Shown here: one piece after another, positions 2,578 to 54,627 of the stretch | How positions within the stretch are numbered: the stretch's first letter is position 1 | Layout of the letters: each line of letters begins with the position of its first letter | NCBI RefSeq assembly: GCF_001194135.2 | Contig: NC_068998.1 | Location: 27,570,180-27,631,709 of the forward strand | Length of the DNA stretch: 61,530 nucleotides | Reading direction: 5' to 3' | Origin: Octopus bimaculoides | Taxonomy: Eukaryota | The notes under the pieces: generated by a model | What the model was told of the DNA's origin: nothing | Databases searched by the model: none | What the model saw: the letters and a program-made list of their open reading frames with translations, nothing else | Made by a program: the position numbers and the translations under genes

Positions 2578-4029
2578 GACAGGCTGCTCCTGAGAGTTCC
2601 TGTATGCTGATGACCTTGCTCTAATAGCCAAGTCACTGCCAAAACTAGAGACGAAGTTTAGGGTGCAGAAGCAAGGTCTAGAATCGAAGGGTCTTAGGAT
2701 TAACCTAGCAAAAACCAAAGTCTTAGTAAGCAGGAAGGCTGACAAATCACCCCTCCAGGTAGATGGCCCTGCTTGATTTGTAGGTGTGGATAGAAACCCC
2801 ATATGACGTACCAGGTGTAAGCTATGGGCACATAAGAGGTGCAGCAATATCAAAGGAAGGTTAACTAGGAAGGTAGTTTTTGTATGTGGCAGATGCACAG
2901 AGGCAAAAAACACTAAAGATATACAGAAAACAGATTCCATCACATGCCAGGGGGAAAACTACAAGTAGTTGATAGCTCTTGCTACCTAGGCAACCAAATC
3001 TGTAGTGGGGATGATTATTCTGAAAGTGTAGCAGCTAGAATAAGAATAACTTCAGCAAAGTTCAAGGAGCTCCTACTGCTGCTGGAAACTAAGGGCCTCT
3101 TGCTCAAGAGATGCAGTGAAACATGGGCCATGACTGCTGAGGACATGCATAGGCTTGAAAGAAATGAAGCTAGTATGATCCGCTGGATGTGTAATGTCAG
3201 TGTGCATACACGACAGAGTGTAAGCGCATTGAGAGAAAAGTTGGACATACGAAGCATCAAATGTGGTGTGCAAGAGAGAGACAACTGGTATGGCCATGTG
3301 TTACGTATGGATGACAACAGCTGTGTGAGGAAGTGCCACACTCCAACTGTGGAAGGAACCTGTGGAAGAGGTAGACCCAGGAAGACATGGAATTAAGTGG
3401 TGAAGCATGACCTTCAAACGTTGAGCCTCACAGAGGCAATGAGAGGAGACCAAGACTTTTGGAGATATACTGTGATTGAGAAGACCCAAAAACTAAAGTG
3501 AGATCGCAGCCATGGTCAATGCCAGTGTTGCATGTCAGGCCCATTTAAAAGTACCCTTGATGTGTTGGGCGATATATGCTTGAGAAGACCTGTTGAGTCA
3601 AACCAAAACGTAGCTGTGACCAGTGCCCCCTGACTGGCTCCTGTTCCAATGGTATATAAAAAGCACCATCCGAACGTGGTTGATGCCAGGGCCACCTGAC
3701 TGGCTCCTGTGCTAGTGGCACGTAAAAAGCATCATCCGAATGTGGCCAATGCCAGTGACCCCTGACTGGCTCCCACACTGGTAGCATGTAAAAAGCACTA
3801 TCCAAACGTAATCAATGCCAGTGCCACCTGACTGTCTCCTGTGCCGGTGGCATGTAAAAAGCACCCACTACATTTTTGGAGTGATTGGCATAAGGAAGGG
3901 CATCCAGCTGCAGAAACATTACAAGATCAGATTGGAGCCCGGTGTAACTGCTGGCTTTCCAAACCTCAGTCAAACCGTCCAACACATGCCAGCATGGAAA
4001 ACGGACATTAAACAATGATGATGATGACA
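2575..4029 (+). mobile_element. 5'-truncated RTE-clade LINE: RT C-terminus, 3'UTR and (TGA)n tail
   Basis: LYADDLALIA, GLRINLAKTKVL, YLGNQI, WYGHVLRMDD, GRGRPRKTW; ends aaacaatgatgatgatga. Confidence 0.88.
3619..3865 (+). repeat. Four diverged 66-bp tandem units in the RTE 3' region
   Basis: TGACTG recurs at 3631, 3697, 3763 and 3829; each unit carries aaaaagca. Confidence 0.85.
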
Positions 4030-4495: not shown

Positions 4496-4904
4496 ATATA
4501 TATACATATATACATACACACGTTTATGTAGTTGTTTTACAATATTCCTATTGTGAAATCTTGTGTTGAAACAGGTATTGTTATATTTGAGGATGGTCAT
4601 GTTTTTGCCAGTTATTCACTTCACTTCAACTTCATTACTATTATTAATATTTTAGTGTCTTTTGTCTAAGCTCTTTCATCACACATCCTGGACTAAATAG
4701 AACTGGAGGAGACACGTGAGATGAAGAGTCACTGGAAAGGTTACAAGAGGTTTGATGAAAGAGTATAGACAAAGGATATTAAAATAATAAAGCTGAAGTG
4801 AAAACCAACTTATATAATGCATGTGTTTAATTGGCAAAAATATGACCATTCCCAAATATAACAATATAGATGTATATATTATCAGCTCATCAAAGGTGAT
4901 GACA

Positions 4905-8600: not shown

Positions 8601-10519
8601 AAATGTTTAGTCGGGATTTCAATTGTCATTTGACGTGTTGAGTGATCATGATCTTTCCGAAATTTTGTCAATGTGCAGCTGTTATTTAATTAGAGTATGT
8701 AATTGGTTTGATAAGCAATTGTTGAAATTATAAAGTCATTTCAAGTTGAAAAATCTCTGGGATACTCAACTAAAAATCCTAAATTCGCACTATCAGTTTG
8801 TGCTTATATATCTTTTTACAACAGACTGAGGCACGTAATTGAGACAGTCCCCTAATCTTTATTGAGGTGGTAATGATGGTGAGGAGGGTGGGTCACTCTG
8901 CCCTCACGATGTGCTCCACCCCAATGAGTGATTGTTTAAATCCAAAACGGTATTGTCTAGAAAACAGCTACAATCCTTATTTAGTACACTGAGCTAAGAT
9001 CACCGTAAGTTTTATTAAAGAAATAAATAAAAGAATTCGACTGACCAAACAATTATTTTAACTGTTTAGTCAGAAGGAGGAGGAGCGGCGCCTATGACCC
9101 TTTTCCGAGCTTCTGAATACAGTGAGGAGCAAGAAGTAAGTTATTCTCAGAGAGGGAACTGGGCCGAATACCTGCAACAGCTAAAAGCTACCAACATCCA
9201 GATGGTGATGTGAAACCAGGCAACTGAACAGTCCAACCAGCCAAGAGCAGGAGGGCCTTCCGACTGGTTTGCGCTTGCTTTTAATTTTGTTTCATTATAA
9301 CTTTCTTAATAATGCATATTTTTAATGACTTTTTACGAATATAAGTTGTCAAAGGTGTAGAATACGATTATGCTGATGAAGTTACTTTTTTCATATAATA
9401 CAGAAAGAGAAGCACTCCATAACATTTTAGCCATTCAATAACTTGCATGTGATCGTTGCACAACGTAGTAACGTGAGGTGAGAGGAACAGAAAACATTGC
9501 TGTGTATCATCCAGAGCACTTTATTCGTTAGTATCTTCATAACTGAATACTGCTCTGGATAGTAGCAGGCGAAGATTTTTTTTATTGTTATACAATGGTC
9601 ATGACCAAGTTATTGAATGTTTAAAAGAGTGTTTCTCTTTCTGACAAAAAAAAAAGTAATTGATTTTTTATCATATTTCATGAATATTATTAAAAGTTAA
9701 CGTTCGAAAATGCATTATAATCAAATTTCATTAGAGATATAAAAGCATTATTAAGAAAGTTATGAGGAAACAAAATAGTACGAAAGGCACTAAACTGTAG
9801 TTATAGCAAAACAGCATGGATATGGAGTAAAAAAAGACACTGGACATATTGATCCAAACTTTCGACCATAATTGTCTGGCAATGGTTCTCTATTTGACTT
9901 GGTGACGCACTGCAGATGAAATTTTAAGAAATTACTGGCGCATTCCGCATGGAAGAAATAAAACAAAACAAAACAAAATTAAACAGGTCTTGAAGTTAAA
10001 AATTCATTAAAAAATATAGAAAGCTGTTGACTATCGTGTTTGAGTCATTATACTTGTGTGTAACATTTTTCTGACACTAATATGAGCATTAATATAAATT
10101 TTCTAAAATCATAAAAATATATTTTCAAAAATCCGCGGCAGACTTAGATTCCTCTTGCAGTGCATCGTCTAAGAATTACTAGTTTAGCATGGCACACTAA
10201 ATATTTATTATCAAAAACATCATAATGTAATACGTATGTGTGCATGCAAGCAGATTACATTCCTAATTAGTGCAACGGAGATGTTTGATCATATAACCAT
10301 TCATACTAGGGTTTGTGCCGAAAATAATTCAAAAGCGAGCATAATTATATTAATCGACTAAACATAGTTTCCGTCACAAGCAATGCCTTTGCACCATCAG
10401 TTAACACAACTCAGTAATCCTCTTAAAAAAAAAAAAATTAGGTGTTTACTACGGCGCCCATTTCTCCACAGATACTTTCACTTGGGGGTAGTGAGAGGGT
10501 GCCAAATTCGGGTTGCATA

Positions 10520-11400
10520 ATAAAAGGGGGGGACCACTGATCATCACATTTTGCTGATTGCCTGATTTGTTACTAATGATTTGTGTGGCCACGCATTGTC
10601 ATGGTCAATGTGAATTGTTTTCAGATGCTTGCTCAGGTCACTTCTGCCTGATGGATTCTCAAAGCTTTTTGAGTGACTCCATTGTACTGCCAGCTCTTCA
10701 CAGTACAACCATGATCCAGAAAAATCAAGAATGACCCCCCCCACCCCCACCCCCCCGCCAAGTAACTACCATGACTTTCTGTGCCAATCGCTGGCTCTTG
10801 AACTTCTTAGGCCTTAGAGAAAAAGCGTGATATGATTCTGTGGACCGAACCTTCGTTTCCAGATCATANNNNNNNNNNNNNNNNNNNNNNNNNNNNNNNN
10901 NNNNNNNNNNNNNNNNNNNNNNNNNNNNNNNNNNNNNNNNNNNNNNNNNNNNNNNNNNNNNNNNNNNNNNNNNNNNNNNNNNNNNNNNNNNNNNNNNNNN
11001 NNNNNNNNNNNNNNNNNNNNNNNNNNNNNNNNNNNNNNNNNNNNNNNACGTATATTCATTGGCTTCTAACGTTACCAGCAAATCAAAACAAACTTCTACT
11101 CTTCTCTCTTTTAAATGTGCCGTCTTCTGCAAGGTATCCACTTTGTACACTCATTCCGATACCCTTTTGTAATGTACTGTGACTGCAGTCCAGGCGTGCA
11201 GTAAGCGCACGGATTGTGACTCGTCGTCCGCGCGAATCAAATCATTCATTCAGTGGCGTTTCCTATTTGCGATCACAGTTGATGGTCTCCTACTGCATAG
11301 TTTGTCTTCAATGTTGGTTCCTTCTTTTTTCAACTTCATGCATGCGCTTGTCAACGGTATCTTCGTAAACATGTAGCTTTCTGTGGTTGTCGGTTAGCCT
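10520..11400 (-). mobile_element. Mariner transposase relic of a different subfamily, spanning an N-gap
   Basis: YDLETKVRSTE, PKKFKSQRLAQKVMV, HDNAWPHKSLVT; boundaries approximate. Confidence 0.75.
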
Positions 11401-19650: not shown

Positions 19651-20291
19651 TCTGGAGATAAAATTCTGCCGAGTTTAACTTTGACTTTATTGATTTCCTA
19701 CACGCAGATAATAAAATAAGCAACAATTGTTTAGCCCACGGTTAGCTCTGATTGAGTAGACCTATAATCAAACACATTCCAGTCCTGACCATTCGTTTTT
19801 TTAACCCCTCAAACATTTAGAACTTTCAGTTTTAAAACGGTAGAATACAATTTGAGGGAGCTTGGTTGCCATGTCTAGCAGTTCGAGCAACCACAAATAT
19901 GCTCTCAGTTTGAATAACTAATCAGTGAAGTACATGAATGAATTTAATCGTCGTATTCACCAATCAAAACTGGTGGTCACAATCATTGTTAGGAGTTGCT
20001 TTTATTTATTTATCTTTTTTATTTATTTATTTATGTTTCGTTACGCTTTGAGTTAAAATTCAACCGAAATTCAGGCGATTCGGTCGGCTATATTTCTCAT
20101 TTGTAAACTTATAGTTTGAAGCCAATATTGAAAATTAAGTCCTCTTACACAAGTTTGACAAATAAAAAATACGAAAGTGTGGCTGAAGAGAAAAAAACCA
20201 TATGCAACAGCATGTGTTACAGAATATTTCCCGCCATTCTAGAGCTGTAAACAAGGTGGATTTCAAAGAAAACTCGCTTTGTGCATACATC

Positions 20292-20349
20292 ATGCCTGGA
20301 TTATTTGATTACGTTAACCAACCACTTCAAATAATACAAAAATTGTTCG
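20292..20349 (+). CDS. MCMBP: MCMBP exon 1 ([19 protein letters not shown])
   Basis: ATG at 20292, 58 nt, donor G|gtaagt; resembles vertebrate N-terminus MPCGEDWLSHPLGIVQGFF. Confidence 0.88.
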
Positions 20350-23195
20350 GTAAGTAACAGCATGTCTTATTTACAGATGGTATTATGGAAAATCTGACTA
20401 AATATTTTCATAGTATGTAATATTATTTCTTATAGTAAAATTTTAAGAAAACGGAGAATTGAAGCGATGAAATATACATAGTTCATAAGTGCCAACACAC
20501 GAAACTCTCGGCCCTTCAGTCAATCTGTTACTTCTGCTAAATATTAATGATAAAAATATAGGTGGACATTGGAATTAGACACTGAGGGAAAATGGCTGTA
20601 ANNNNNNNNNNCCACCACGAAACTTGATATGCTAGAAATAACAGCTAAACGCGGACAATCCTAAATCTATTCACAAGGCATTCGTTGTCCTGAGGCGATT
20701 TGCTTGAGGTGCTGCACAGTGGGATCGAATCCCAAACTGCATGGTCATAAAGCATTCTTCTTTATCACAAAGTCATTCCGGGTCAGGCCAAAATCCATTG
20801 GTACCGATACAATTATAAAACTGAAGAATGTTTTTCTATCCTATAATAATTCAAGACTGTTCAATCAAAGAATTAAAGTGTTCTGTTGAAAAAATAGCTG
20901 AGCCTAAAGAAAGTATTATCTTCCCTGACAAAGTTAAATTCTTTGGTCTTAATGCAAAAAGCAGGGGAACCAGCTAATGAATTTCTGAAGGTTCTAATAT
21001 CCAAATATTTTACACTTGTAGTAAATGATTTGATTCTTGGAAAGTTAAATGAGCAACTCAGTAAATCAAATTAAAATTTACAGCCATTGGCCTTTTATAT
21101 CATTTAACCCATTAGCACTCAGATTATTAAATGCTTATTTATTCACATTGTTTTGAATTAATCTTGCATTATCTTGCAGTTTTGAGATTTTGATGGTGTC
21201 ATTGTTTATTTTTAGAATGACACTGTACAGTACATGTGAGAGGACAGATCTGGCTGGTTTGAACATAAAACATGCAGAATATTTGGGCCGGAATTGGCTG
21301 GTTTAAATGCCAAAGGGTTAAGTTTTGTCTTATGAACAAAAAGAAATCCTTTGCAGCAAATTGGAGCCATGTCAACATATGCACATCAAAATCATTGTAT
21401 TAAACTAAGTTTGTCTGTAATATTAATGTTAAATGCTATGAATTCTTAAAAAGTCTGCTGATGAGAAAGTAACTTTGAATATTAGTTAGACAACAAATGA
21501 TGATTTACATTGGGTTAATTGTAAGTTGAAATGCTGATTCTGGTGCAGCATGTTCCATGATTTTGGTTTCACTATTAACAAAGTTATCATTAATCATTTA
21601 AAAGCCTTTAGCATTTGAACCAGCCATATCCAGCCAAAATATTCTACCTGTCTTGTACTCAAACTGGCCAGATCTGGCCTCTCACACCTACCCTATAATT
21701 TCACTCTGCATATAAAAAAATCACATTATCAAAATTTCAAATCTATGAGATAATGCATGATTAATTTAAAACAAAGTGAAAAAAACAAGCGTTCCATTTG
21801 ACAAAGTAACCTGGATACTAAAGGGTTAACCAAATGATTAAACATTTACACATTTTATGATCATTCAAAACTAGAGGTGGTTAGTACAACTTTGCTTGAC
21901 TTTACAGTACTTCAACTTTGTTGTTAATAGCGCAAACACTCTGAAAGATACATCATATTGCTGTTTCCAATTATTTACATCTGAAAAAAGTTATAACACC
22001 AAAATTTCAGTAATCCTTTTGGTACCAGACTGCCCCTGGCTCTATCATAAAGACTTCCCATTTTAAAGTGGTCTAAATTAAAGTCTTGTGTCTAAATTTC
22101 ATACTAATTTATGTTCCCAACTTGAGTTTAATAATGACAAATTATTGTAATAAATTCTTCACTATTTGAAAATTAATTGAAACAAAATTAATGTATTTCA
22201 GATAACAAAAGAGTTAAAAATAAAATTTGCTCAGTGTATGCAGTCTCGGTATACATAAAATAGGAGACTGAAAATGAACTTCACAATCTTCAAGTTATGA
22301 GAATTATAACTGTATGAAGATGTCAACATTGCTCTGGTCCAAATGCTTACAATAGAATATATTCTGCTTTAGCATTTAGATTACTCCATCAAATATAATG
22401 CTTATTTATTTATGCTTTTGAATTAATCATGTATTGTAGCTTAAAGATTTCCTTGATGAGGTGATTGTGTGTTTTAGGATGAAAATTGTTGGATGTAAGA
22501 GGCCAGATTTGGTCAGTTTGAACAAAATACATGTAAAATATTTGGGCCAGATCTAGCCAATTTCAATGCTAAAGGGCTAACTGAGTGGTTAATCGACTTA
22601 AGTAAAGTTGTAAAGAAAGTGTTGTATAGCTATAACTTGAAGATATTTAAAAAGAATGAGTAGACAGCCATTTCATAAATATTTATCCTTCCACAAGCTA
22701 ACCACCTCTGTCTTACAAGCCATATCCAAATAATCATTGTACATTTGTCTCTTTAACTTTTGCTTGCATGAAAAGTACTTCTAAATTTTGAATGCTTTTT
22801 TTTTTTTTACCTATTATTTCCCAAAATACTTTCAGATCAACAAGGTTCATTGAAGCCAGAATCAGTTTCAGACTATTTTAGGAAAGAACTAGAAAAGCCA
22901 TCACTTGCAGCACAAGTGAGTTTTTTCTTTCATTCTTTCTTGTGTTTTATGAATTTATTTTAAAAATTTCCTCAGTCACGGAAGGATTGCTGCTGGAGAT
23001 TATAGTTTCTAATTAATCATTGAGTAGAGAAGGAAGAATATTTATGGTTGTGTGGTAAGAATTTTAGCTTTCCAACCACTTGATCCAATGTTCAGTCCCA
23101 CTGCTTGGCACCTTGGATAAGTGTCTTCTATTATAGTCACAGCCCAACTAAAGCCTTATGAGTGGATTTGGTTGGCAGAAATTGAAAAGAAGCCC

Positions 23196-23234
<39 letters not shown>

Positions 23235-26200
23235 GTCTCCTTGCCTGAGCATCATGTGTTGTAAGCAAGAGTCCCCATCATGCAAGTAGTATCCTTCCAA
23301 TCTTTCATGAAAACATGTCTGGTTATGGAGACACGCTTATTTATTCACATTGTTTTGATTTAATCATATATTATCTGATAAAGTTACTTCCCTTGAGTAA
23401 AAAATAGCCGTCCCAGTTAAAGTTGCCATTTCTTAGTAGCTATTCTTGACTTAATCTTATATTGACAACTAAAGAAATAAGAAAAATAATTTGTATGAAA
23501 AATTAGGATTGAAGCCAAAAATTATTGAAACAGTTTAAACTGTTATCTTTTATCTGTTTTGGTCATTAGACTGTGGCCTTGCTGGGGCACTGCCTTGAAG
23601 AACTTCCAGTCGAATCGACCCCAGTAATTTTTTGTGTGTAAAGCCTGGTACTTATTTTATCAGCCCAGCACTGGTCGTCAAGTGGTAGTGGGGGACAAAC
23701 ACTGATACATAGGCTCACACACACATAGTTATGGTATATTCGATTAAGAATGTAGTAGAGTTCAGTATAAAGTTCATCCACCTTCAGGTTGACCCCTGTG
23801 CTATCTAGTTGTAGTATTATACATACTTCCAGGTTTGTGTTTGGGCTTCTGTTGTGTGTGAATAGATAATTAAAAAAATTGGAGTCAACAAGGAGGATTA
23901 TGGTTGGACATTTATCTTCTAATCGCTACAATTGTTTCCACATAATGTAGTTCTCCAGGCATGCAGGTACTTGATTATGCAACCGTTTCCCCAGGTGATA
24001 TGTAAATATTGTCTCTATAAGTTCATATTCTCAGCTTCATAAACATCCTCTCTATCTGTCACTGAGTTTATCAGGGTGTGTTGTTGCTGAAGGGATGTTG
24101 GTAAATGTCCAACTGTACTCCTTATTGTTGACTCTAATTTGTTTCAATTATATATATGTACACACAATGGGTTTCTTTCAGTTTCTGTCTACCAAATCTA
24201 CTCACAAGGCTTTGGTCAGCCCAAGGTGCCATGTGGTTAGGAAGCAAGCTTCTTGCCACCTCTGCACCTATAAAATTTCTTTGTACAACAATGTGAACAT
24301 GGGATGTTTTGTTTTGTTTAGGTGAAATCTGTCAACTCCACAGCACTTCACGACCTGATTCCCAACTCTTTAGTGCGTTATCGATGTATGGTTCAAGATA
24401 TGTTTGATCCCGAATTTTACATGGGAACATACAAAATAAAGGACCCCTGCACAAAACAAACATTTGTTAAGTGTGGAATGTACCGTGATGTGGCAGAATG
24501 CAAGGTGAGTTTTAAAAAATTTTCTTTCGTTCATTCAGCAGAGACAATTTATAATGTATTGCCTAATATCATTATGTATAATTGCATGAAAGCCCCCACT
24601 TCTGAAGTTTCTGGCAATATGTTGAATAAGTTAGCACATTACATAACTTAATTTGAGTTCAAATCCTTCCAAGGTCATCTTTGTTTTTCTTTCCTCCAAG
24701 GTCAATAAAAGTACCAGTCAAATACTGAGGCTGTTGGTATCAAGTAACCCCCTCCCTTCAAAATTGCAGGCCTAGTTCATCATTATCATCATTATACATC
24801 GGTTTCCCATGCTGGTATGGGTTGGATGGTTTGATCGGACTTGGTAAGGCAGGAGCTGCACCAGGCTCTATTGTCTGTTCTGGCATGGTCCCTATAGCTG
24901 GATGCCCTTCCTAATGCCAACCACTCCACGGAGTGTACTGGGTGTTTTCATGCCAAACCAGCACTGGTATCAATTCTGCTGTGACAGACAAGTCTTCTTG
25001 AGTACAGCAAGGTGCTAGATATCTCAGTCCTTTGTCATCTCCTCTGTTAGAAACAGTTATTATGCAGCTTAAATCACTATAGAGTGTAGCGCTTACTAAA
25101 GATGTTTTGAGAAAGCCATATTGTAGATTCATGAAGCCTATATCACAAGAGAATATTTTAATGTGCCACAAAGAAACCTTTTGAGCTAAACTATTCTGCC
25201 AGTGTCATTCCTCTGTTTAAGAAAGGGTGACCGCATGTTACCTGTCAACTATAGTCCAGTCAGTCTTACTAGCTGTATTGCCAAACTAATGGAATCCTGT
25301 GTCAGAGAAACAGTCTGAAACATCTGGAATTCTCACAGAGTTACTCAGCTCTCGCAATTTGGATTTATCCCTATCTGCTGTGATCAACTTATCGAGTTTC
25401 TTGAAGACATCACCTGGGTCACTGATGGCGGCTCATGGGTGGATGTTGTTTACCTTGTCTTTACTAAAGCTTTTAATTCTGTGCCACACAAAAGACTTAT
25501 GGCAAAACTCTCTGCAATGGGTGTGAAAGATGATCTTTCTAACTGATTGGAGTCCTTCATTCTCAACTGAAAAGGACAGCATTCTTCACCCTATTAGATG
25601 TCATCTGGTGTACTGCAGGGATCTGTTCTTTGTCCCCTTTTGTTTGTTGTATACATTAATGACATAGATGCTAACTTAAAGAATGCCACAGTGCTGAAAT
25701 ATGCAGATGACATCAAGCTGTACCTTGAGATGAAAAGGACAGATCCTGAACACTATAGATCTTTCCTGCAATTTGACCTGGACACAATGTAACAATGGAT
25801 TACAGGCTGGCAACTCAAGCTGGCTGTGGACAAGTGTACCACCATGCATTTTGGGAGGAAAACCCCAGTGTCCACATACTCTCTCCACAACACTAATACC
25901 AAGAAGTCTTCTTGTGAACATGACCTGGGCATTAGTCAGCAGTGATTTGTGCTGGACAAAGCACATCTCTAAAACTGGCAAGAAGGCTGAGGGTGTTTTG
26001 GCATCACCCAGCAAGACCTTTGTCAGCTGCCCTCCAGCTATCGATTTAAGGCTGTATATGGTTATGGTGCAGCCACACTTGGAATTTGCATCACCAGTCT
26101 GGAACCCCTATTTTGCTCAGGACATTGACCTCCTGAAACTGTTCAGAGACGTGCAACCAAGCAAACACCCTCCATGCTCTGAACACCTTGCTTCCCTGGG

Positions 26201-29200
26201 CTTAGATACATTAGAATTATTAAACTTTTGTGCCAGTAACTACCTTGTGCATCTTTTTGAGCTCCATGTGTCTAACACGCGTGGGCATGCCTACAAAGCC
26301 AGAAAACAGCACAGCTCCCATGACTTTCGGAAACATTTTTTCACACTCAGAGTTGCTGAAGCATGGAACAAACTACCTGCATCAGTTGTTAGTTGCCGAG
26401 ACATTGCAGCCTTTAAAACCTCCATGCTTCCTGAAATTCGCCAACACTACGCCTGATACCCCCCCCCCCATATGCATACACACATGTATATCATGACTCA
26501 TACACTGTTCACTTTCCTGACTTTTGTACATAATTCTATGTACTATACATGCACCTTTGATGAGTTGTAGTGCACCTGAACACTATACATAATAACTTCA
26601 TTATTATTATTATATTATTATTAAAATATTTGATAGAAACTTTTATATATGTTATATTTTTGTTTTAGCCTGAAGAGATTGTGACTGATAGTAATCAAAT
26701 TGTGATGCTTGACCGACAAACCCTTTACTGTATTCCAATCCCAGCTGAGACACAATGGGTGAAAAAAATATCCTTTACCATTGATCTACAATTTTATGAC
26801 CTAAATAACTTTTTCTGATTATTCTATAAATTCTATTCTTAGTAGTAAAAGTCTTTAATAACTGTCCTACCAGAATAAAACTGAATGTTTTTTTAATCTA
26901 ATTTGGTTCTGTAAAGACAGGTTTAGCCTAATACAGGTTCTGCTATTTATTGAAATGTTTCTGTTATATAGCTAATGCTGGAGGTTTGTAAATCTATATA
27001 GTTATTCAAACAACACAAATAACAAAATATGCACTTTTGATTTCTAAATCGCAAACCAACAACTTGTTTACATTCATTTTTCTCTAACAAAGTTATTAGT
27101 CCTTAATGACCCCCCCCCCCCACTACTTTGCTATATGACATTGCTTATTTTCGTCTTTACAAATTGTCCTTAGTGCTAACCTTATGGTTGTATAGAGTTT
27201 AATGTTGACAAGGATGGCTACTGTAAGTTTAGAGATATACTTTGACTAGGACCATTTTACTATCACAGTATTTTGACTTGTGATCAGAACTATAACCTGA
27301 CATTTCTGAAAATGGTTCTAAATAAGAAAAATAAAACAAAACATTGAAAATTATGTCACAAAGCTTGAGTGATTTCTCTAATTTCCCTGTGTGAATGCTT
27401 TTAGTACTTAACTCTTTCCAAGGATATGCTGAGAAGGAAAAAACAGTGTCTTCTGAACTTAGTGCTAGTGCTAGTGGATCCCTGAAGAGACCCCATGATG
27501 ATGTGGATGATACTGAAGATATGGAATGTACAAATCCACATGACACAGAAATGAATCCAGAAGACAAACGCAGCAGACAAAATATCTTTGAAGGTTTTAA
27601 ACTTTAATTTTTTTTATAGTCAAATTAGGAAGAGCTTTGTTAAATGATTTCTTTCTGAGTTAATAACGTATTTCTTTTTGGTTTTTTTTCTCAGGTCAGA
27701 CATCAACTACTTCTCCACTTGATTTGAACTTTCCTCTTCCAGGTGAGACTGGTCCTGCATGTTTAGTTAAGGTAAAGTTAAATATAATTTAAACATATTT
27801 TCCAAAGAATCATCAAGATTAGATTAGTAGGCCATTGTGTTATTGTAGAGCAGAAATGTAACTGTTTCAAGCAAAAGGATGCTATTGGTTATTTTATAAT
27901 TATGAAGATGCTGGGATTTAAGCAATAACAAAATAAGAAATTTGTAATTGTCTTTGTATGTATGTGTGTAAGAAAAAAAACATATTAAAATAGATTATCT
28001 TTCACATACTCTTTTTAAATCACTCTGTTGCCCTAATAAAATTCCTTACACATATGCATAAACATACATACACTCAGCGTGAGCAATATATGTGTACAGA
28101 CAGTGAGAGAGAGTGGTAAATATATATAGAGAGGGGAAAGTTTACAGTGAGAAAAGTGAAAAATGAAAGAGATAGACGAGAGAGATCTTTTCTATTGTCA
28201 CAGATTTTGAAATAATTTTCAAATTTAGTATATTGATGTACTTTTTCATGCTGAATTCGATTTTGTGATTCATTTATTCCTGAACAGTTTTAGAAAAACG
28301 GTAGAGAGGTTTAAAGTTTGATCTTTTACCCAATCTGAGAACAGAATTCGGAAGCTGGCATTTTTTGTGTGATAGCTGTCAATCATAAAATGAAAGTAAA
28401 CATTATAACAAAGTTTTAAAACAAAATGAAAGCAATTATGTAATGAAAAAAGAGAGATGGGGACAGAATGTGTGAGAAATAAAGTGTACAAAAAGAGTGA
28501 TAAAGAGTGTGGTAAATATATAAAGAGAGGGGAAAGCATAAGAGAGAAAATGTGATGGTGATATATAGAGATTGGGAGATTTGTCAATCTAAAAGTGGAG
28601 TTATTTCTCATAGAAAATTATATTTTTTGATTATCATTTACAGACAACTTCTTTGGGACACAGATTTAGAAAATCAAAATTCATGTTTTTTGAGGATGTA
28701 CCATTTCAGGGCCTTTTGGGGCTAAACACATATACATAACCACATACCCTCGCATTTATATAGATGTTTTTTTGAATGTCTTCAATTACTTGGTATGTAC
28801 ATACACACACACACACACACATACATATATAATTGTGTACATAAATAAAAAATTTAGAACAAGGAACAAAATTCCTTTCAATTTTAATTGGAAAAAAGAT
28901 ATTAGTTTTACTACTAGAGTGAATGAATAAAACTAATGTTTTATTTACATAATATAAATCTAATTATAATATTATATAAGTCCTTGCCTTCTTTGGTAAA
29001 TGACATAAAAATTTAATAGAGGGCATTAGCTCATAATGATAGTTAAATAAAGACAAATATTGAATAGAATAGAATGAGACAATAATACGGATTATAAACC
29101 ACTCAGCAAAATTAACTTTGTGTAAATGTGTGTGTGTGTTGCTTTTTTTCCCCTCAAAACATGATGGATCTTGTTAAATACAGTTGGGAGAGATTTGTTT

Positions 29201-32200
29201 TTTTGGTTTTCGAATGCTAGTAGAATTTGATGCTTACAACATTTTTGGTTACTTTTTCTTTACAACCTAATAAACTAAATATTTGCATTTTTTGTAGATT
29301 TATGACAAAGTTGATAGCTTGAAAGTAAATGATATGCTTGAAGTGATAGGTATATTATCTATAGACCCTTCCATGGTAGCTGATTCACCAGACTTGTAAG
29401 TCATTTGTTTGTTGTTGTTTTTTTACTTGTTGGGTTTTTTTTTTTTCCTTGGTGTTTTCTGACAGAAATTCTTTTGCTTTTCCATATAGATCTTTTAACT
29501 TCTCCCTTGCTGTATTTTAGCTCAGATGACATTGAAGAAGGAATGAATTCTACAGCTGTTGAACATTTACCACCACCATCTCTGGTTCCACGAATACATG
29601 CAGTGATTGTCAACAAAGTGGAGCATAACAATCCGTGGCTTACTAATTCTCTTGACAAAGACAGTCAAGAAAAAAGTTTGTATTTCTGTTTACTCTGACT
29701 TTCTCAATCAAAACCACTGTTAGTGTTTGTTAATATTATTAATGTTTGGTTAATCCTATTGTTTAATATCCTTACTGACTAATATTGTTTAGTACCATGT
29801 TAATTGGATCATTGTTTAAAATAACAAAAATAGATCAAAGCAGTTAACACAGTTTGTCATGGGGAACAGAGGCCCATTATTAAGTAATCTATGGTTTACT
29901 CTACTGTCTACTGCTTCATTAATAAGAAGACTAGAGTTTGCACCCATATCGTTCTTCTTTCTTCACGATGTTGCTGGACAATTTTAAATCTGTCTTAATT
30001 ATGTCAAACACAGCAATTTGCTTGACCCCTGTCTATCTTTTCAGTCTTCACAGGCCCACCTCATATGAGTAATATTGGTTTACACCAGCCTCAACAATTG
30101 ATAGCTCTTCATTCCCTCTTATTTCTTGACAGTTGAAGAAAAATAAAACCTAAACATGCTAGCTTTCTTTTCAGAAAGAAATAGAATCTATTAATAAGCA
30201 ACTTCAGAGTTCTTCTGAAATAATTTATATAAACACTAACATAATTTGTAACTTAGTATCTTTCTTTTGAAGCTTCAGACACAGAAACACTACTAATTTG
30301 AGGAGGAAAGTCTTGTTTTTTGCAGTTTACAAAACTGCTTTCCGATTGATAAGCAGAGTTCATGAAAGTTCACATCAGTATTTTTGTTCAACTATGAACT
30401 GCAGTTTGCCAATAGCTCTGTCTTTTTTTATATATCACATTAATATGCAACTGGTTTTCTGATTTAAAAAGAAAAAAGGGATCTATTTTAAAATGGGGGC
30501 CACATTTTTCATTAATGTTTTACGTAGTGTTTTTGGTACGGAAAGACTTTCAAACTTCGTATACTTATCTATTTTGTGTTATAGAACAGAAAAATATTTT
30601 TGTGTTCGAATTTATTTCATGTAAAAAATTATCTTATTTCGATAATTTCAACCAATCACTGACAAGTATTCAGTTGTTTACATTTACTCCTTTGGCTGAT
30701 TAAGCGATGTAAAGCGTATTTAATCTCCATACCTTCGTTTTATTTGCTTTAACTCTAACCCTAGGGTTAGGGTTAGGGTTAATTGTTTCAGAATCGTTTG
30801 TTTATGTAGTCGGCACTTAATGTATATCGGCTGAATGGACGTCAGTGATTGGTTGAAATTACAGAAATACGACAACTTTCACATGGAATAACTTATGGAT
30901 TTCTTTTTTTTTAAAGAAGACTAAAAGAAAAAAGATGTTTTATATGACACATTCTACCAGTGTTCCAAGTTTCAAAGTGTTTCGTTAATGAAAAATGTGG
31001 CCCCCGTTTTAAAAAAGATCCGAAAAAAGATAAATCATCCATTTTACAGTGGTTCATGTTTAAATTAAATCCTTGTCACAATTTTATGTTGAAAACTTTA
31101 ACTTGTTTCAAACTCCATTTTAATGAGAAGTTACTTCTCCAAGTTATTATTTAAAAAATAATTAATTAAAATACTTGGTTAGTGTATTTCATGAAATATC
31201 TGATTACTAAAGCATTGAATTTGGTCTAATCTTTGGGTCAGTGTTCATGTCCACATTAAGTGGATTCATTGTTTAATATTATATATAAAACATAATAAAT
31301 GAGTATTTGCATATATACGTACAGGTATGTGAATACCTATGTCTACCTGTATATATAGGTGCATACCTGGGTACAGGACATTGCAAACAAACGTAGACAA
31401 AAAAAAAAAAAATAATAACCAGAGTACAGAACACACACAGGCCACATAGAGAACATTTTCCTTCATCAGCTACCCCCATTCTAACACAGGCGTTTCGAAG
31501 AGTATATATATATATATATATAGCTTTTTGAAATTATTCTGGTATATTTTCTATAAATGTATTTTGTGTATATTACAAACTTATCATTTCCACTCTAATT
31601 GCATACAATCTTTTTTGTTAATGTTTATGGTCATCTAATGTTACATGTATTCTATTTAATATTGCTTGTTTTTCAGTTCTTGCAGAGGTTGGAGAAGATC
31701 TGAAGACACTCCGAAGACGTCTTTTGGAACTGTTGCAACAGGTGACACTTGGAGACAGTTTGGCTGCAGAATATCTCCTCTGTCATTTAACTTCCTCAGT
31801 GTATGTATGTCTCCACATAAGTCATATTCTCACCTTTATGGAATACTACTCTATCATTTGCTCTCCACAGAGTATGCATATGACCATACGAAACTTACCG
31901 ATCTCATTTAGCTCTTCAGTGTTTGTGTCAATGGAACAGTTCTCTTTCATTTACTCTGCACATAGTACGTAACCACACTGAACGCTTCTCTCTCATTTAC
32001 TTCCTTCAGTGTATTGCACTCTCAGTTGCCAGGAGCATGGTGTGTTCTTGAGCAAAACACTTCATTTCACATTACTCTAGTGCTTTATGGGGACTGGCAT
32101 GCCAAAGAATACACCCAACATTTCCTCCACATGTCATGAAAGCAACTAAAAGAGGTTGAGGTGGGATTTGTACTCCAGCCTCATAAAAACCCTTACCAGC

Positions 32201-34579
32201 AATGACTACCCAAACAGACCCATGGGCTGGAGGGTTGTCACCGCAGTAGGGAATCACCAACAAATGGTGGATGAAGCAACAAGCTGTCATTGCACATGCC
32301 CCCATACTACTACAAATGTATGCATGTTATTTTGAATTTTTTTTCTACTCCAAACTTTAAAATATAAAAACCCTGCTAAACTTTAAATTTCAGTTACTTT
32401 TCATCTGGCCTTCTTCCAATTGGTAAACTCTCTTTAAATCTGAGCCGAGTTCCCACATCTCTTGGATATGCCAAATTGCTGCACCAGTTTATTTCTTCCC
32501 TTGTTACCAAGGTAATTAGATCACATTAATTAATTGTAATTATTATTTTATGCCTGCTTTTCCATGCTTGCATGGGTCATTATGGTCTAAAATCTCATTT
32601 GGAGTTTACAGAAAATAATTTGCCATGGTGATTTTTGGAATTCTGGCTCTGTTGTTCAGTTTTTAACTTTTTAATGGTTTGAAATACCTTTATTTGTTAG
32701 TCATTTGACTGTGACTATGCTGGGGCACTGCCTTGAAGGGTTTTAGTCAAACAAAATCAATCCCTGGACTTATTTTATTAAGACTGGTACTTATTCTAGC
32801 AGTCTCTTTTGTCAAACTGCTAAGTTACAGAGACTCAAGTGGTAGTCGGGGATAAACATATATATGACAGGCTTCTTTCGGTTTCTTCTACCAAATTCAC
32901 TCTCAAGGCTTTGAGTCAACTTGAGGCTATAGAAAACAACACTTGCCCAAGGTGCTATGCAGTGGGATCGAAACTGGAACCATGTGGTAGGGAAGCAAAC
33001 TTATTACCATATAGCAGCATGTGTATTCTAGGTTTTAAAATAATTCTTCAAATGTAATCTATTTTCCAGTGTTACATGCTGCCACTGAGCCTGAATTATC
33101 TCAACGGCAAGCTGTTCAGCCCTCAGAAAGACTATTCCAAGAATCGTTTAAAGACCGGTGTATTACAAATGAGCAAACAGACTCATCTCATACTTGATGA
33201 AACACAACTAGAAGCTGGGCAGCTCAATGTTGAAGGTAGTTTTCAAGTTACTGTATTTCATTCCATTTTTGTCTTATTCTCTGAGTATATGCTATAACTC
33301 TTTTTTATATATTTTTCAGGTCATAAAAACATCAAAGCATTAGAAAATGTTATTCGCTTTCAGAAGATAGAGTATGATTTTGGCTTCTACCAACGAGAAT
33401 ATGAATCTAATATTGAAGTCCTTTGCATTTCTGAAGGAAAGTCTATTTTACCTGTAAGTAATCTATCTATCTTTCTCTCTGTAGAGGATGCAGACATTAA
33501 TGATTTTTCTCTTTCAATCAGCTAAAACAGGCTTGGCTGTATTGTTTAAGAAGTGTCTTCAGGCTCAATTCTATTGTGCAGCACCTTGGGCTATTTTGTA
33601 ACTCTCTTTGGCTGCCCAATGCCTTATGAGTGAATTTGGTACAAGGAAATTGTAAGCAGCCTCCATATAAGCTACAGTTTTAAAAACCAGTGAAAAAAAA
33701 ATCCCTTACTTAAAATAACATGTAAAGAGTATTGACAGGAAGAGCATCTAAAGTTTCGCCTCAAAATCAATTCCAAGCCATGCTAGTAGGGGGTGGGGTC
33801 ATTAAAATGAACATATAAGTGTAAGTTGTGTACTGGCCCTGACACCTATAATTACTTAATCTTGTGTTCATTTCTTTAGGCAGATGTTCATGTTCCACTT
33901 GACATTAGCATAAGATATGAAAACCTGGACAGTTATTTTTCTCATCTGAATAATGAACTGACTCCAAACCTGGTAAAAAAATTCCAAATCTACCTTGGTT
34001 TAGTGAAAAGAATGGAATATACTCTAGAGAAGGAATTTGAACAGGTAAGAAAATGATAGTTTACTCTTTAGCATTTAAACAGACCAAATTCAGCTCAAAT
34101 ATTCTACAGCTAACCTCTCACACCTAACTTACACTAACATTCTAAAAGTAAACAATCACATCATCAAAACAATCGGAATAGAAAAAAAGCATTGCATTTG
34201 TCAGAGTAATCTGAACACTAAAAAAGTTAACTTTCTTAGACACTTGAGGATTTAAATTAAATTTTGTGTTTTTCTATTTCCCTAGTTTGTTCAGAATGAT
34301 TTCATTAGTATGCGAAAAAATGACAGTAAAAGTATTACTGAAGATGGATTACATTCTTTGCTTAATCTTACACGGTATGTATATCTTTATAGTATTCTTG
34401 AAGAAATATTGTATGAATGTTTAGACTACTAATAAGTAATTTCTTCTCTTTTCAGACTTCTCACTATGAGTTGGGGCCTTCCTGGTCCAACAGCAGAAAT
34501 GTGGCAACGTGCCAAAGTTCTAGAAACTTCATGCAGAGAACGGGTACCACAGCAAACCCAAACACTTCAACCTCATTAG
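20292..34579 (+). CDS. MCMBP: Mini-chromosome maintenance complex-binding protein, whole-gene span: join(20292-20349,22836-22915,24322-24504,26669-26767,27422-27593,27695-27771,29298-29395,29521-29675,31677-31800,32394-32511,33070-33235,33320-33453,33880-34044,34286-34374,34456-34579), 1842 nt, 613 aa
   Basis: Translated exons contain MCMBP hallmark segments: [109 protein letters not shown]. Phases of all 14 introns are mutually consistent; 13 are GT-AG and one is U12-type. Confidence 0.97.
21104..21321. mobile_element. piggyBac-like MITE (TTAA CCC...GGG TTAA)
   Basis: ttaacccattagcactcaga...aatgccaaagggttaa; further copies at ~21598-21829, ~22366-22580 and ~34061-34230. Confidence 0.75.
21598..21829. 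mobile_element. piggyBac-like MITE copy (opposite orientation)
   Basis: Reverse-complement similarity to 21104-21321; ends ctaaagggttaa. Confidence 0.7.
22366..22580. mobile_element. piggyBac-like MITE copy
   Basis: ctttagcatttagattac...aatgctaaagggctaa. Confidence 0.7.
22836..22915 (+). CDS. MCMBP: MCMBP exon 2 ([27 protein letters not shown])
   Basis: ttcag| acceptor, |gtgag donor; phase 1 to 0 fits neighbours; matches ..EYFKEKL.. region. Confidence 0.85.
23040..23200 (+). mobile_element. SINE 5' part followed by (GT)n
   Basis: ggttgtgtggtaaga...gttcagtcccactgc head; (GT)n at ~23199-23229. Confidence 0.7.
24322..24504 (+). CDS. MCMBP: MCMBP exon 3
   Basis: [35 protein letters not shown]...YRDVAECK; tttag| and |gtgagt. 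Confidence 0.96.
25060..26620 (+). mobile_element. 5'-truncated CR1-group LINE RT in MCMBP intron 3, with (TAT)n tail
   Basis: [64 protein letters not shown]; tail attattattat near 26600. Confidence 0.9.
26669..26767 (+). CDS. MCMBP: MCMBP exon 4, followed by U12-type donor ATATCCTTT
   Basis: [33 protein letters not shown]; ttttag| acceptor; no in-frame GT donor fits, ATATCCTTT begins at 26768. Confidence 0.92.
26768..27421 (+). other. U12-type (minor spliceosome) intron 4 of MCMBP, predicted AT-AA termini
   Basis: 5' ATATCCTTT; branch-site-like TACTTAAC at 27405-27412 about 10 nt before the frame-preserving junction. Confidence 0.8.
27422..27593 (+). CDS. MCMBP: MCMBP exon 5 (5' boundary 27422 preferred; 27413 alternative)
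   Basis: [35 protein letters not shown]...IFEG; acidic KR-D-rich linker as in MCMBP; donor AAG|gtttta gives the phase 1 needed by exon 6. Confidence 0.8.
27695..27771 (+). CDS. MCMBP: MCMBP exon 6
   Basis: [26 protein letters not shown]; ctcag| and |gtaaag. Confidence 0.95.
29298..29395 (+). CDS. MCMBP: MCMBP exon 7
   Basis: [32 protein letters not shown]; tgtag| and |gtaagt. Confidence 0.94.
29521..29675 (+). CDS. MCMBP: MCMBP exon 8
   Basis: [39 protein letters not shown]...; tttag| and |gtttgt. Confidence 0.93.
30479..31021. mobile_element. Palindromic MITE with 8-bp TSD (GAAAAAAG), GG...CC termini and a central telomere-like inverted repeat
   Basis: ~40-bp TIRs ggatctattttaaaatgggggccacatttttcattaa / ttaatgaaaaatgtggcccccgttttaaaaaagatcc; TSD at 30471-78 and 31022-29. 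Confidence 0.85.
31677..31800 (+). CDS. MCMBP: MCMBP exon 9
   Basis: [41 protein letters not shown]; ttcag| and |gtatgt. Confidence 0.95.
32394..32511 (+). CDS. MCMBP: MCMBP exon 10
   Basis: [39 protein letters not shown]; ttcag| and |gtaatt. Confidence 0.92.
32688..33025 (-). mobile_element. tRNA-derived SINE in MCMBP intron 10
   Basis: Same family. Confidence 0.78.
33070..33235 (+). CDS. MCMBP: MCMBP exon 11
   Basis: [56 protein letters not shown]; tccag| and |gtagtt. Confidence 0.95.
33320..33453 (+). CDS. MCMBP: MCMBP exon 12
   Basis: [44 protein letters not shown]; ttcag| and |gtaagt. Confidence 0.95.
33880..34044 (+). CDS. MCMBP: MCMBP exon 13
   Basis: [10 protein letters not shown]...[23 protein letters not shown]; tttag| and |gtaaga. 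Confidence 0.94.
34286..34374 (+). CDS. MCMBP: MCMBP exon 14
   Basis: [30 protein letters not shown]; cctag| and |gtatgt. Confidence 0.94.
34456..34579 (+). CDS. MCMBP: MCMBP exon 15 (terminal coding exon, stop TAG 34577-34579)
   Basis: [40 protein letters not shown]; ttcag| acceptor. Confidence 0.92.
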
Positions 34580-34704
34580 AAATATTCTTAATAAACACAT
34601 TATTGCAATCTATTGTTGAGCTGTTTATATTTATTACTTAAAACATGGATAGAATCTAAAAGAAGAAAAAACCCAACAAACAACCTGGATAAAATGAACT
34701 AATG

Positions 34705-34724
34705 TTTATTTTGAAATGAATAAA
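34705..34724. terminator. Opposed polyadenylation signals: TTTATT (AATAAA on -, ILF2) at 34705-34710 and AATAAA (+, MCMBP) at 34719-34724
   Basis: Hexamers visible between the two stop codons; a second + AATAAA lies near 34588; actual usage is inferred. Confidence 0.45.
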
Positions 34725-35072
34725 ATGATGGTGGAATACTGATGAGTTTCTCAACTGCTAACTAGTTTAACACCAAAATGTCTGCAAAGAGAGAGAGAAA
34801 AAGTAAATCAGCATCTTTCAAATGATGTGACTGAAAGAGTAATAAATTATTTACATGTGACAAGTATATTAAACAAAAGGAAACTTTCACCACCTCTTGA
34901 AAAAAAAAAGTTAAACACAAAATTATACATAAGCACCAAGTCTCAAAATCTCTTCTGGTGTAAGAAAGAAATTGGGTTTCTCTTTAAAATGGCTATTTTA
35001 AAGTAAGCTGTCCTTCATAATTTCATAAAATGAAATTGGATAAAGAGATGAGCAAGAAGTTATTTACCTGAG

Positions 35073-48755
<13,683 letters not shown>

Positions 48756-54318: not shown

Positions 54319-54627
54319 AGCCTGTATGGTCTGGCTAAGTCANNNNNNNNNNNNNNNNNNNNNNNNNNNNNNNNNNNNNNNNNNNNNNNNNNNNNNNNNN
54401 NNNNNNNNNNNNNNNNNNNNNNNNNNNNNNNNNNNNNNNNNNNNNNNNNNNNNNNNNNNNNNNNNNNNNNNNNNNNNNNNNNNNNNNNNNNNNNNNNNNN
54501 NNNNNNNNNNNNNNNNNNNNNNNNNNNNNNNNNNNNNNNNNNNNNNNNNNNNNNNNNNNNNNNNNNNNNNNNNNNNNNNNNNNNNNNNNNNNNNNNNNNN
54601 NNNNNNNNNNNNNNNNNNNNNNNNNNN

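What the first reader, a model, noticed from the sequence alone, without database searches (positions are those of the whole stretch)
26768..27421. Minor-spliceosome intron in MCMBP with probable AT-AA termini
Seen: exon 4 ends ..TGG GTG AAA AAA followed by ATATCCTTT (U12 AT-AC donor consensus). TACTTAAC at 27405-12 resembles the U12 branch site, followed by tctttccaa|GGA TAT. The nearest AG (27421-22) is out of frame and gives a stop within ~20 codons. The frame-preserving options are AA|27422 (branch A ~10 nt upstream) or AC|27413 (inside the branch motif, adding SFQ). Vertebrate WVKEAY aligns gap-free with WVKK|GY, favouring AT-AA. Established: U12 introns tolerate rare non-canonical 3' dinucleotides. 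Gene predictors will probably mis-annotate this junction.
Basis: partly seen in the sequence, partly recalled or inferred. Interest (0 to 1): 0.7.

Follow-up and report, generated by a model that had tools for sequence, protein, structure and literature searches.

The report
Octopus MCMBP minor intron, AT-AA ends
Intron 4 of the octopus MCMBP gene is a genuine minor-spliceosome (U12-type) intron, at the same position as the known human one, but it ends in the rare AA instead of AC; this is a known kind of variation that the reference annotation already handles, though several other gene models get it wrong.

Summary
Exon 4 of MCMBP ends at 26767 (…TGG GTG AAA AAA). The intron starts with the full U12 donor ATATCCTTT at 26768. 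A branch-site motif TACTTAAC lies at 27405-27412. Nine bases later the intron ends in AA (27420-27421), in front of GGA TAT.

The RefSeq protein of this genome (Octopus bimaculoides XP_052830160.1) maps exactly onto the window in 15 exons. Thirteen of 14 introns have a GT-AG solution. Intron 4 has none, and only AT-AA fits the U12 donor.

The same AT-AA arrangement, with the same 9-nt spacing, occurs in O. sinensis, Argonauta, abalone and a chiton. Argonauta has no A-run, and there the AC option gives a stop. The chiton has no AG beside the AA. Limpet, oyster, gar and human have AT-AC, an annelid has GT-AG, and amphioxus has lost the intron.

All four minor-spliceosome snRNAs and a CENATAC homologue are present in the genome. 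The human orthologous intron is a documented U12 AT-AC intron.

AT-AA is the commonest non-canonical minor-intron type, so this is a solid but ordinary new member of a known kind. I found no direct RNA evidence. Three deposited octopod gene models mis-annotate the junction.

The parts
20202..34579 (+). MCMBP coding region: 15 coding exons and 14 introns. The RefSeq model starts at ATG 20202; the conserved MPGLF start is ATG 20292; the stop is TAG 34577-34579.
   Evidence: tblastn. Exact exon-by-exon mapping of P0124 = XP_052830160.1. Pfam MCM_bind, E = 1.3e-183. Single copy in the genome.
26669..26767 (+). Coding exon 4 ([33 protein letters not shown]), which ends in phase 0.
26768..27421 (+). 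Intron 4, 654 nt, U12-type, termini AT-AA.
   Evidence: It is the only intron of the gene without a canonical solution. The protein-compatible boundaries are AT-AA, AA-CA and AA-CC, which all give the same mRNA, and only AT-AA starts at the U12 donor.
26768..26776 (+). U12-type 5' splice site ATATCCTTT.
   Evidence: The identical motif sits at the orthologous junction in O. sinensis, Argonauta, Haliotis, Liolophura, Patella, Crassostrea, gar and human.
27405..27412 (+). Branch-site motif TACTTAAC (7/8 to TCCTTAAC). The candidate branch adenosines are 27410 and 27411.
   Evidence: The octopus U12 snRNA carries the consensus AGUAAGGAAAAU stretch, which established knowledge identifies as the branch-site-pairing sequence.
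27420..27421 (+). 3' terminal dinucleotide AA, 9 nt after the branch-site C.
   Evidence: O. sinensis, Argonauta, Haliotis and Liolophura have the same AA at the same 9-nt spacing.
27421..27422 (+). Neighbouring AG, one base downstream. Using it shifts the frame and gives a stop after 20 codons.
27422..27593 (+). Coding exon 5 ([11 protein letters not shown]…RQNIFE, plus the first base of the next Gly codon), followed by a canonical GT-AG intron.

Best explanation
Intron 4 of octopus MCMBP (26768-27421) is removed by the minor (U12-dependent) spliceosome and belongs to the AT-AA subtype.

Inferred mechanism, from established knowledge of this pathway:
1. U11 and later U6atac pair with the donor AUAUCCUUU.
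2. U12 pairs with UACUUAAC and bulges out one of the two adenosines (27410 or 27411).
3. The 3' cleavage site is set mainly by its short distance from the branch point, not by a strict dinucleotide. The cut therefore falls after AA at 27421, 10-11 nt from the branch A.
4. This joins …GTG AAA AAA to GGA TAT GCT… (WVKK|GYAEK).

The intron is the ortholog of the human MCMBP AT-AC minor intron. Its last base has changed between C and A several times in molluscs.

Shown here: the motifs, the spacing, the orthology, the snRNA genes, the lack of any canonical solution for the annotated protein, and cross-species conservation of the AA.

Inferred only: the actual RNA junction and its dependence on the minor spliceosome in octopus.
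For: 1. Sequence anatomy fits.
2. P0124 (RefSeq XP_052830160.1, not flagged low quality) maps exactly to the window. Thirteen of 14 introns are GT-AG. Intron 4 admits only AT-AA or its equivalent shifts.
3. The O. sinensis RefSeq protein reads the same WVKKGYAEK, and its independently assembled genome has gtgaaaaaa|ATATCCTTTACC … GTACTTAACTCTTTCCAA|GGATAT.
4. Argonauta has aaaatg|ATATCCTTTTAC … TCCTTAACTCTACCTAA|GGCTAT. There is no long A-run, the AC option gives an in-frame TAA, and the annotated protein reads WVKMGY.
5. Haliotis (…ACCTTAACACACAACAA|GGT) and the chiton Liolophura (…TCCTTAACTCTGTCCAA|TCA, with no AG beside it) are also AT-AA. All five have exactly 9 nt after the branch-site C, as in AT-AC Patella.
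6. Human MCMBP chr10:119853195-119857337 is listed as a U12 AT-AC intron, GGTAAAAGAA|ATATCCTTT … TTTCTTAAC…TTTAAC|GCCTAT. It is retained after CENATAC depletion and in RNPC3 patients.
7. U12 (129.7 bits), U6atac (98.2), U11 (94.5) and U4atac (83.3) genes are in the genome with consensus 5' regions. A CCDC84/CENATAC homologue is also present.
8. Literature: AT-AN termini support U12 splicing. AT-AA is the commonest non-canonical minor type. AT-AA/AT-AC switching between orthologs is known, e.g. MSH3.
9. All transcript-derived orthologs keep the gap-free W-V-K-x-x-Y/F/H/N pattern. Gly after the junction is common, and Arg is never seen.
Against: - No spliced read or cDNA from an octopus was reachable with these tools, so the junction rests on gene models and comparison.
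- RefSeq models can in principle be shaped by protein alignments rather than by RNA.
- The branch site has one mismatch (A for C at its second position).
- The AG one base downstream lies at an equally acceptable distance (11-12 nt) and may be used some of the time.
- O. bimaculoides and O. sinensis introns are 95% identical overall. That pair therefore argues against assembly error but says little about selection.
Confidence: 0.88

Rival explanations
1. The true acceptor is the AG at 27421-22 (AT-AG), and the frame is rescued because the A-run is really A8, that is, an assembly error. The protein would then read WVKK-R-YAEK.
For: An AG is present one base downstream at an acceptable distance from the branch site. 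Homopolymers are error-prone in assemblies.
Against: - The independent O. sinensis assembly has the same A7.
- Argonauta ends the exon in AAAATG, with no long run, and has the same frame relation.
- The chiton has no AG at all.
- Arg is never seen at this position in any ortholog, whereas Gly is common.
- Reviews call AT-AG disfavoured.
Confidence: 0.02
2. Canonical AT-AC splicing to the AC at 27411-12 inside the TACTTAAC motif, which would add Ser-Phe-Gln.
For: It is in frame in Octopus. The O. vulgaris model P0001 contains …NSFQGYAEK.
Against: - The AC is part of the branch-site motif itself, 0-1 nt from the branch A.
- I saw no other U12-like branch motif in the ~25 nt upstream (read by eye, not scanned).
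- In Argonauta the same option gives an in-frame stop, ST*.
- No ortholog has three extra residues here.
- The O. vulgaris model relies on a GT…AG pair whose AG is absent in O. bimaculoides, ATG versus AAG.
Confidence: 0.02
3. The region is spliced mainly by the major spliceosome through a cryptic GT-AG pair (GT at 26759, AG at 27435-36), as in the original JGI model. This would delete VKKGYAEK.
For: The UniProt model A0A0L8GJF8 (P0126) reads AETQW|EKTVSS. Activation of cryptic major sites around minor introns is known.
Against: - It removes the conserved W-V-K-x-x-Y block present in every ortholog, including transcript-derived ones.
- The acceptor lies in purine-rich coding sequence with no pyrimidine tract.
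- RefSeq models in two species do not use it.
- It could still exist as a minor by-product.
Confidence: 0.04
4. Both cleavage sites lie one base further 3' (a TA…AG intron), giving WVKK-R-Y.
For: It is in frame in all species, as any equal shift is, and it would use an AG in octopods and Haliotis.
Against: - From established knowledge, U12 5' cleavage falls directly before the R of RTATCCTT. As far as I know, no TA-start class has been described.
- In the chiton it would need TA-AT.
- Annotated proteins read Gly or Ser from intact GGN or TCA codons. The GGA-to-GGC difference between Octopus and Argonauta is synonymous only under the AT-AA reading.
Confidence: 0.02

Closest known systems
Human MCMBP U12-type intron (chr10:119853195-119857337, AT-AC; CENATAC-dependent A-type minor intron)
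   Same: Same gene, same position and same phase (after W-V-K-x). Same donor ATATCCTTT. A TTAAC-type branch site close to the 3' end.
   Different: The human intron ends in AC, 12 nt after the branch-site C, and is 4.1 kb long. The octopus intron ends in AA, 9 nt after it, and is 654 nt long.
Documented AT-AA U12-type introns (e.g. human and mouse RASGRP4; human MSH3, which is AT-AC in mouse)
   Same: U12 donor and branch site with a 3' terminal A instead of C. The last base switches between orthologs. AT-AA is the most common non-canonical minor termini in animals and plants.
   Different: A different gene and lineage. Here the AA state is seen in three mollusc classes, alongside AC in two other molluscs.
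Orthologous MCMBP introns in other animals found here
   Same: - AT-AA with identical spacing: O. sinensis, Argonauta, Haliotis rufescens, Liolophura sinensis.
- AT-AC: Patella vulgata, Crassostrea virginica and spotted gar.
   Different: The annelid Owenia has the GT-AG U12 subtype (GTATCCTT … TTTTCTTAACcttaaAG). Branchiostoma floridae has no intron here.

Membership tests
U12-type (minor-spliceosome) intron | Extended 5' splice site /RTATCCTTT at the exon-intron junction | tested here: met
   ATATCCTTT at 26768-26776, directly after the last in-frame codon of exon 4.
U12-type (minor-spliceosome) intron | Branch-site motif TCCTTAAC-like, complementary to U12 snRNA | tested here: met
   TACTTAAC at 27405-27412, 7/8 to the consensus. 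Argonauta and the chiton have a perfect TCCTTAAC at the same place. The octopus U12 snRNA keeps the consensus GUAAGGAAAAU.
U12-type (minor-spliceosome) intron | Short branch point to 3' splice site distance (optimum 11-13 nt according to PMC3584512) | tested here: met
   10 nt from A27411, or 11 nt from A27410, to the last intron base (literature).
U12-type (minor-spliceosome) intron | No distinct polypyrimidine tract upstream of the 3' splice site | tested here: inconclusive
   Only TCTTTCC lies between the branch site and the 3' end. The sequence upstream (…CCCTGTGTGAATGCTTTTAG) is mixed. I computed no formal score.
U12-type (minor-spliceosome) intron | The organism has the minor spliceosome | tested here: met
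   U12 129.7 bits, U6atac 98.2, U11 94.5 and U4atac 83.3, all above the Rfam cut-offs. A CCDC84/CENATAC homologue is present.
U12-type (minor-spliceosome) intron | Positional orthology with an experimentally supported U12 intron | tested here: met
   Same codon position and phase as human MCMBP U12 AT-AC. That intron is retained on CENATAC depletion and in RNPC3 patients.
U12-type (minor-spliceosome) intron | Splicing depends on U11/U12/U4atac/U6atac in vivo | not testable with these tools
   Needs snRNA knock-down or inhibition in octopus cells, or a minigene assay.
AT-AA subtype of U12 introns | The intron begins with AT and ends with AA, as defined by the mature mRNA junction | tested here: met
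   For the RefSeq protein the only boundaries that start at the U12 donor are AT-AA. The arrangement is conserved in four other species. This rests on gene models and comparison only.
AT-AA subtype of U12 introns | Direct transcript evidence for the junction 26767|27422 | not testable with these tools
   No octopus transcript contigs were found in the protein collection. The genome holds no retrocopy.

The most novel reading that the evidence does not exclude
The AA terminus with an AG one base downstream, seen in Octopus, Argonauta and Haliotis, might act as a built-in leaky switch. Occasional AT-AG use by the error-prone minor 3' site choice would give a frameshifted transcript with an early stop, presumably degraded by nonsense-mediated decay. 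That would tune the dose of MCMBP, a factor associated with the MCM replication complex, according to minor-spliceosome activity. More modestly, this single orthologous intron records at least three independent C/A switches of the last intron base within molluscs. That would make it a natural series for asking whether AT-AA is neutral.
Probability: 0.1. Interest if true: 0.5.

Novelty: new member of a known kind. Interest (0 to 1): 0.28.

Why it matters
This is a clean, well-supported example of a non-canonical AT-AA minor intron in a cephalopod. It is orthologous to a human minor intron whose retention has been reported when minor-spliceosome components are depleted or mutated.

In practice it marks a junction that three deposited octopod gene models get wrong. 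The original O. bimaculoides model drops VKKGYAEK. The O. vulgaris model inserts LLVLNSFQ. One Argonauta model runs into the intron and splits the gene. It also shows how to correct them.

In evolutionary terms, the last base of this intron has changed between C and A repeatedly in molluscs, while donor, branch site and spacing stay fixed. This fits the established view that the minor spliceosome picks its 3' site by distance. It does not change current understanding.

Tried and rejected
- **Octopus transcript contigs.** The full-length search, the cluster listing and a 177-aa fragment spanning the junction returned only genome-derived octopod proteins. The Logan transcripts found are from decapodiform cephalopods (about 58% identical) and other taxa. 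They give WVKQ|AY at the RNA level, but no matching genome was available.
- **Retrocopy as a fossil of the spliced mRNA.** The protein search of the window's own genome found only the 15 exons of this locus.
- **Failed look-ups.** Xenopus tropicalis (P0093) and Mercenaria (P0014) are not on record.
- **Papers not held.** Dietrich et al. 2005 and Levine & Durbin 2001 could not be read. Their content is cited only through Sheth 2006, Turunen 2013 and de Wolf 2021.
- **Second motif copy.** The other ATATCCTTT in the window (4771-4779, minus strand) lies in repeat-rich non-coding sequence and is taken as chance.
- **RNA genes and repeats.** Rfam on the whole window found no RNA gene. Tandem-repeat finding on 20000-35000 found nothing inside the intron.
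- **Downstream AC.** An AC at 27443-44 is 33 nt from the branch A and out of frame, so I rejected it.

Full report
**Observation.** The window carries the MCMBP gene (mini-chromosome maintenance complex-binding protein) on the + strand, from about 20.2 to 34.6 kb (tblastn; Pfam MCM_bind E = 1.3e-183).
- Exon 4 ends TGG GTG AAA AAA at 26767.
- ATATCCTTT follows at 26768-26776.
- TACTTAAC is at 27405-27412 and tctttccaa at 27413-27421.
- GGA TAT begins at 27422 and reads openly (GYAEKEKTV…).
- Starting the exon after the AG (27423) gives a stop after 20 codons.
- Starting after the AC inside the branch motif (27413) adds SFQ in frame.

The 9-mer donor alone is not rare: 2 matches in the window against 2.02 expected. 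The second copy, at 4771 on the minus strand, lies in non-coding, transposon-rich sequence. The significance comes from position, not from the motif count.

**Gene model.** The window is G000:C18:27570180-27631709 of a 2.34-Gb genome. RefSeq protein XP_052830160.1 of Octopus bimaculoides (P0124) maps onto the window without a single mismatch in 15 coding exons. For each intron I listed all donor/acceptor pairs that reproduce the protein. Thirteen of 14 introns have a GT-AG solution. Intron 4 has only AT-AA (26768-27421) and its two equivalent shifts, AA-CA and AA-CC, which give the same mRNA. So no canonical intron can produce the annotated protein here. Only AT-AA begins at the U12 donor. The gene is single copy and has no retrocopy.

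**Is the AA real or an assembly artefact?** The independently assembled O. sinensis genome has the same gtgaaaaaa|ATATCCTTTACC … GTACTTAACTCTTTCCAA|GGATAT, and its RefSeq protein reads WVKKGYAEK. The two introns are 95% identical overall. This pair therefore argues against an error in the A7 run but says little about selection.

Argonauta hians is more telling. Its exon ends AAA ATG, with no long A-run. The intron starts ATATCCTTTTAC and ends TCCTTAAC-TCTACCTAA|GGC TAT. The annotated protein reads WVKMGY. The option of using the AC inside the branch motif gives an in-frame TAA.

**Wider comparison.** The same junction, after W-V-K-x in phase 0, was recovered in other animals.

| Species | Termini | 3' end or note |
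|---|---|---|
| Haliotis rufescens (abalone) | AT-AA | ACCTTAAC-ACACAACAA\|GGT |
| Liolophura sinensis (chiton) | AT-AA | TCCTTAAC-TCTGTCCAA\|TCA; no AG beside the AA |
| Patella vulgata (limpet) | AT-AC | — |
| Crassostrea virginica (oyster) | AT-AC | — |
| Spotted gar | AT-AC | — |
| Human | AT-AC | GGTAAAAGAA\|ATATCCTTT … TTTCTTAAC…TTTAAC\|GCCTAT, in a published intron table |
| Owenia (annelid) | GT-AG (U12 subtype) | donor GTATCCTT, branch site TTTTCTTAAC |
| Branchiostoma floridae | no intron | — |

All five AT-AA species have exactly 9 nt between the branch-site C and the intron end. Patella (AT-AC) also has 9, and the oyster has 8. On any reasonable mollusc tree the sampled states need at least three C/A changes of the last intron base (inference). 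Every transcript-derived ortholog keeps the gap-free W-V-K-x-x-Y/F/H/N block. Gly after the junction is frequent, and Arg, which the AG-plus-A8 reading needs, is never seen.

**Machinery.** The genome encodes all four minor-spliceosome snRNAs above the Rfam cut-offs: U12 (129.7 bits), U6atac (98.2 bits, 35 matches), U11 (94.5) and U4atac (83.3). Their 5' regions match the Rfam consensus: U12 AGUAAGGAAAAU, U11 AAAAGGG and U6atac AAAGGAGAGA. By established knowledge these stretches pair with the branch site and the 5' splice site. A CCDC84/CENATAC homologue is also present: three exon-level matches in order on contig 20. In human cells CENATAC promotes splicing of AT-AN minor introns.

**Mechanism (inferred).**
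1. U11, then U6atac, pair with AUAUCCUUU.
2. U12 pairs with UACUUAAC, with one mismatch, and bulges out A27410 or A27411.
3. The 3' site is chosen by its short distance from the branch point, 10-11 nt here. The published optimum is 11-13 nt, and 3' site choice is described as error-prone (PMC3584512).
4. The last base need not be C. AT-AN termini support U12 splicing (Sheth 2006 citing Dietrich 2005; de Wolf 2021).

**Comparison with what is known.** Human MCMBP is a known minor-intron gene. The orthologous intron is listed as U12 AT-AC. It is retained after CENATAC depletion (PMC8280824 datasets) and in RNPC3 patients (PMC7612377). For AT-AA U12 introns, Sheth 2006 counted 3 in human, 4 in mouse and 1 in Arabidopsis, with AT-AA/AT-AC switching between orthologs such as MSH3. 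Larue et al. 2023 found AT-AA to be the most common non-canonical minor termini in animals and plants. Their study describes molluscs as relatively minor-intron rich and includes O. sinensis. The feature is therefore a new, well-supported member of a known kind.

**Annotation consequences.**
- RefSeq models for O. bimaculoides and O. sinensis, and one Argonauta model, carry the correct junction.
- The original O. bimaculoides model (UniProt A0A0L8GJF8) uses a cryptic GT(26759)…AG(27435-36) pair and drops VKKGYAEK.
- The O. vulgaris model CAI9736278.1 reads [15 protein letters not shown]. It relies on an AG (gaaAG|CTTTTA in the O. sinensis locus, used here as a stand-in for O. vulgaris) that is ATG in O. 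bimaculoides.
- A second Argonauta locus is split into a model that runs into the intron (…WVKM-ISFYLHHHH) and one that starts at MERENTK.

**Limits.** I could reach no octopus cDNA or spliced read. The mRNA junction is therefore inferred from gene models and comparative evidence. Occasional use of the neighbouring AG, which would give a frameshifted product, cannot be excluded.

**Verdict.** My confidence is about 0.97 that the intron is U12-type and about 0.88 that its termini are AT-AA. Novelty is low and interest modest.

Noticed in passing
window 20202-20291: The RefSeq model starts at an upstream in-frame ATG (MQQHVLQNISRHSRAVNKVDFKENSLCAYI), 30 codons before the MPGLF start. All other species' proteins begin at MPGLF or a similar start, so the N-terminal extension is probably an annotation artefact.
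   Followed up: partly
window 1195-1596 (-) and 2594-2776 (+): Transposon remnants lie upstream of MCMBP. One is a mariner-type Transposase_1 fragment (E = 8.4e-10). The other is a reverse-transcriptase fragment (RVT_1, E = 3.8e-6, below the Pfam cut-off).
   Followed up: partly
window 10869-11047, 20602-20611, 42726-42736, 54343-54627: Runs of N mark assembly gaps. One of them (20602-20611) lies inside MCMBP intron 1.
   Followed up: no
window 27110-27121; L002 about 9790-9815: The U12 intron contains a C12 homopolymer in this genome. O. sinensis has CCCCAACCACCAACACCACCGCC at the same place, so the C-run length may be unreliable or recently changed.
   Followed up: no
L002 about 9970-10140 (O. 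sinensis intron 4): O. sinensis has about 170 extra bases in the intron. They are flanked by a direct repeat (ATCAGAACTA) and, by eye, carry inverted-repeat ends. This looks like a MITE-like insertion, or a deletion in O. bimaculoides.
   Followed up: no
own genome: U6atac gives 35 matches above the Rfam cut-off, spread over many chromosomes. U12 and U4atac give one match each and U11 gives three. This suggests many U6atac copies or pseudogenes.
   Followed up: no
Argonauta hians, two scaffolds (P0127 versus P0002 and P0128): MCMBP is present on two Argonauta contigs with slightly different sequences. This could be a haplotig or a duplication. On one contig the gene model is broken exactly at the AT-AA intron.
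   Followed up: no
window 4771-4779 (-): A second exact ATATCCTTT has no coding context around it. I take it as a chance match.
   Followed up: partly
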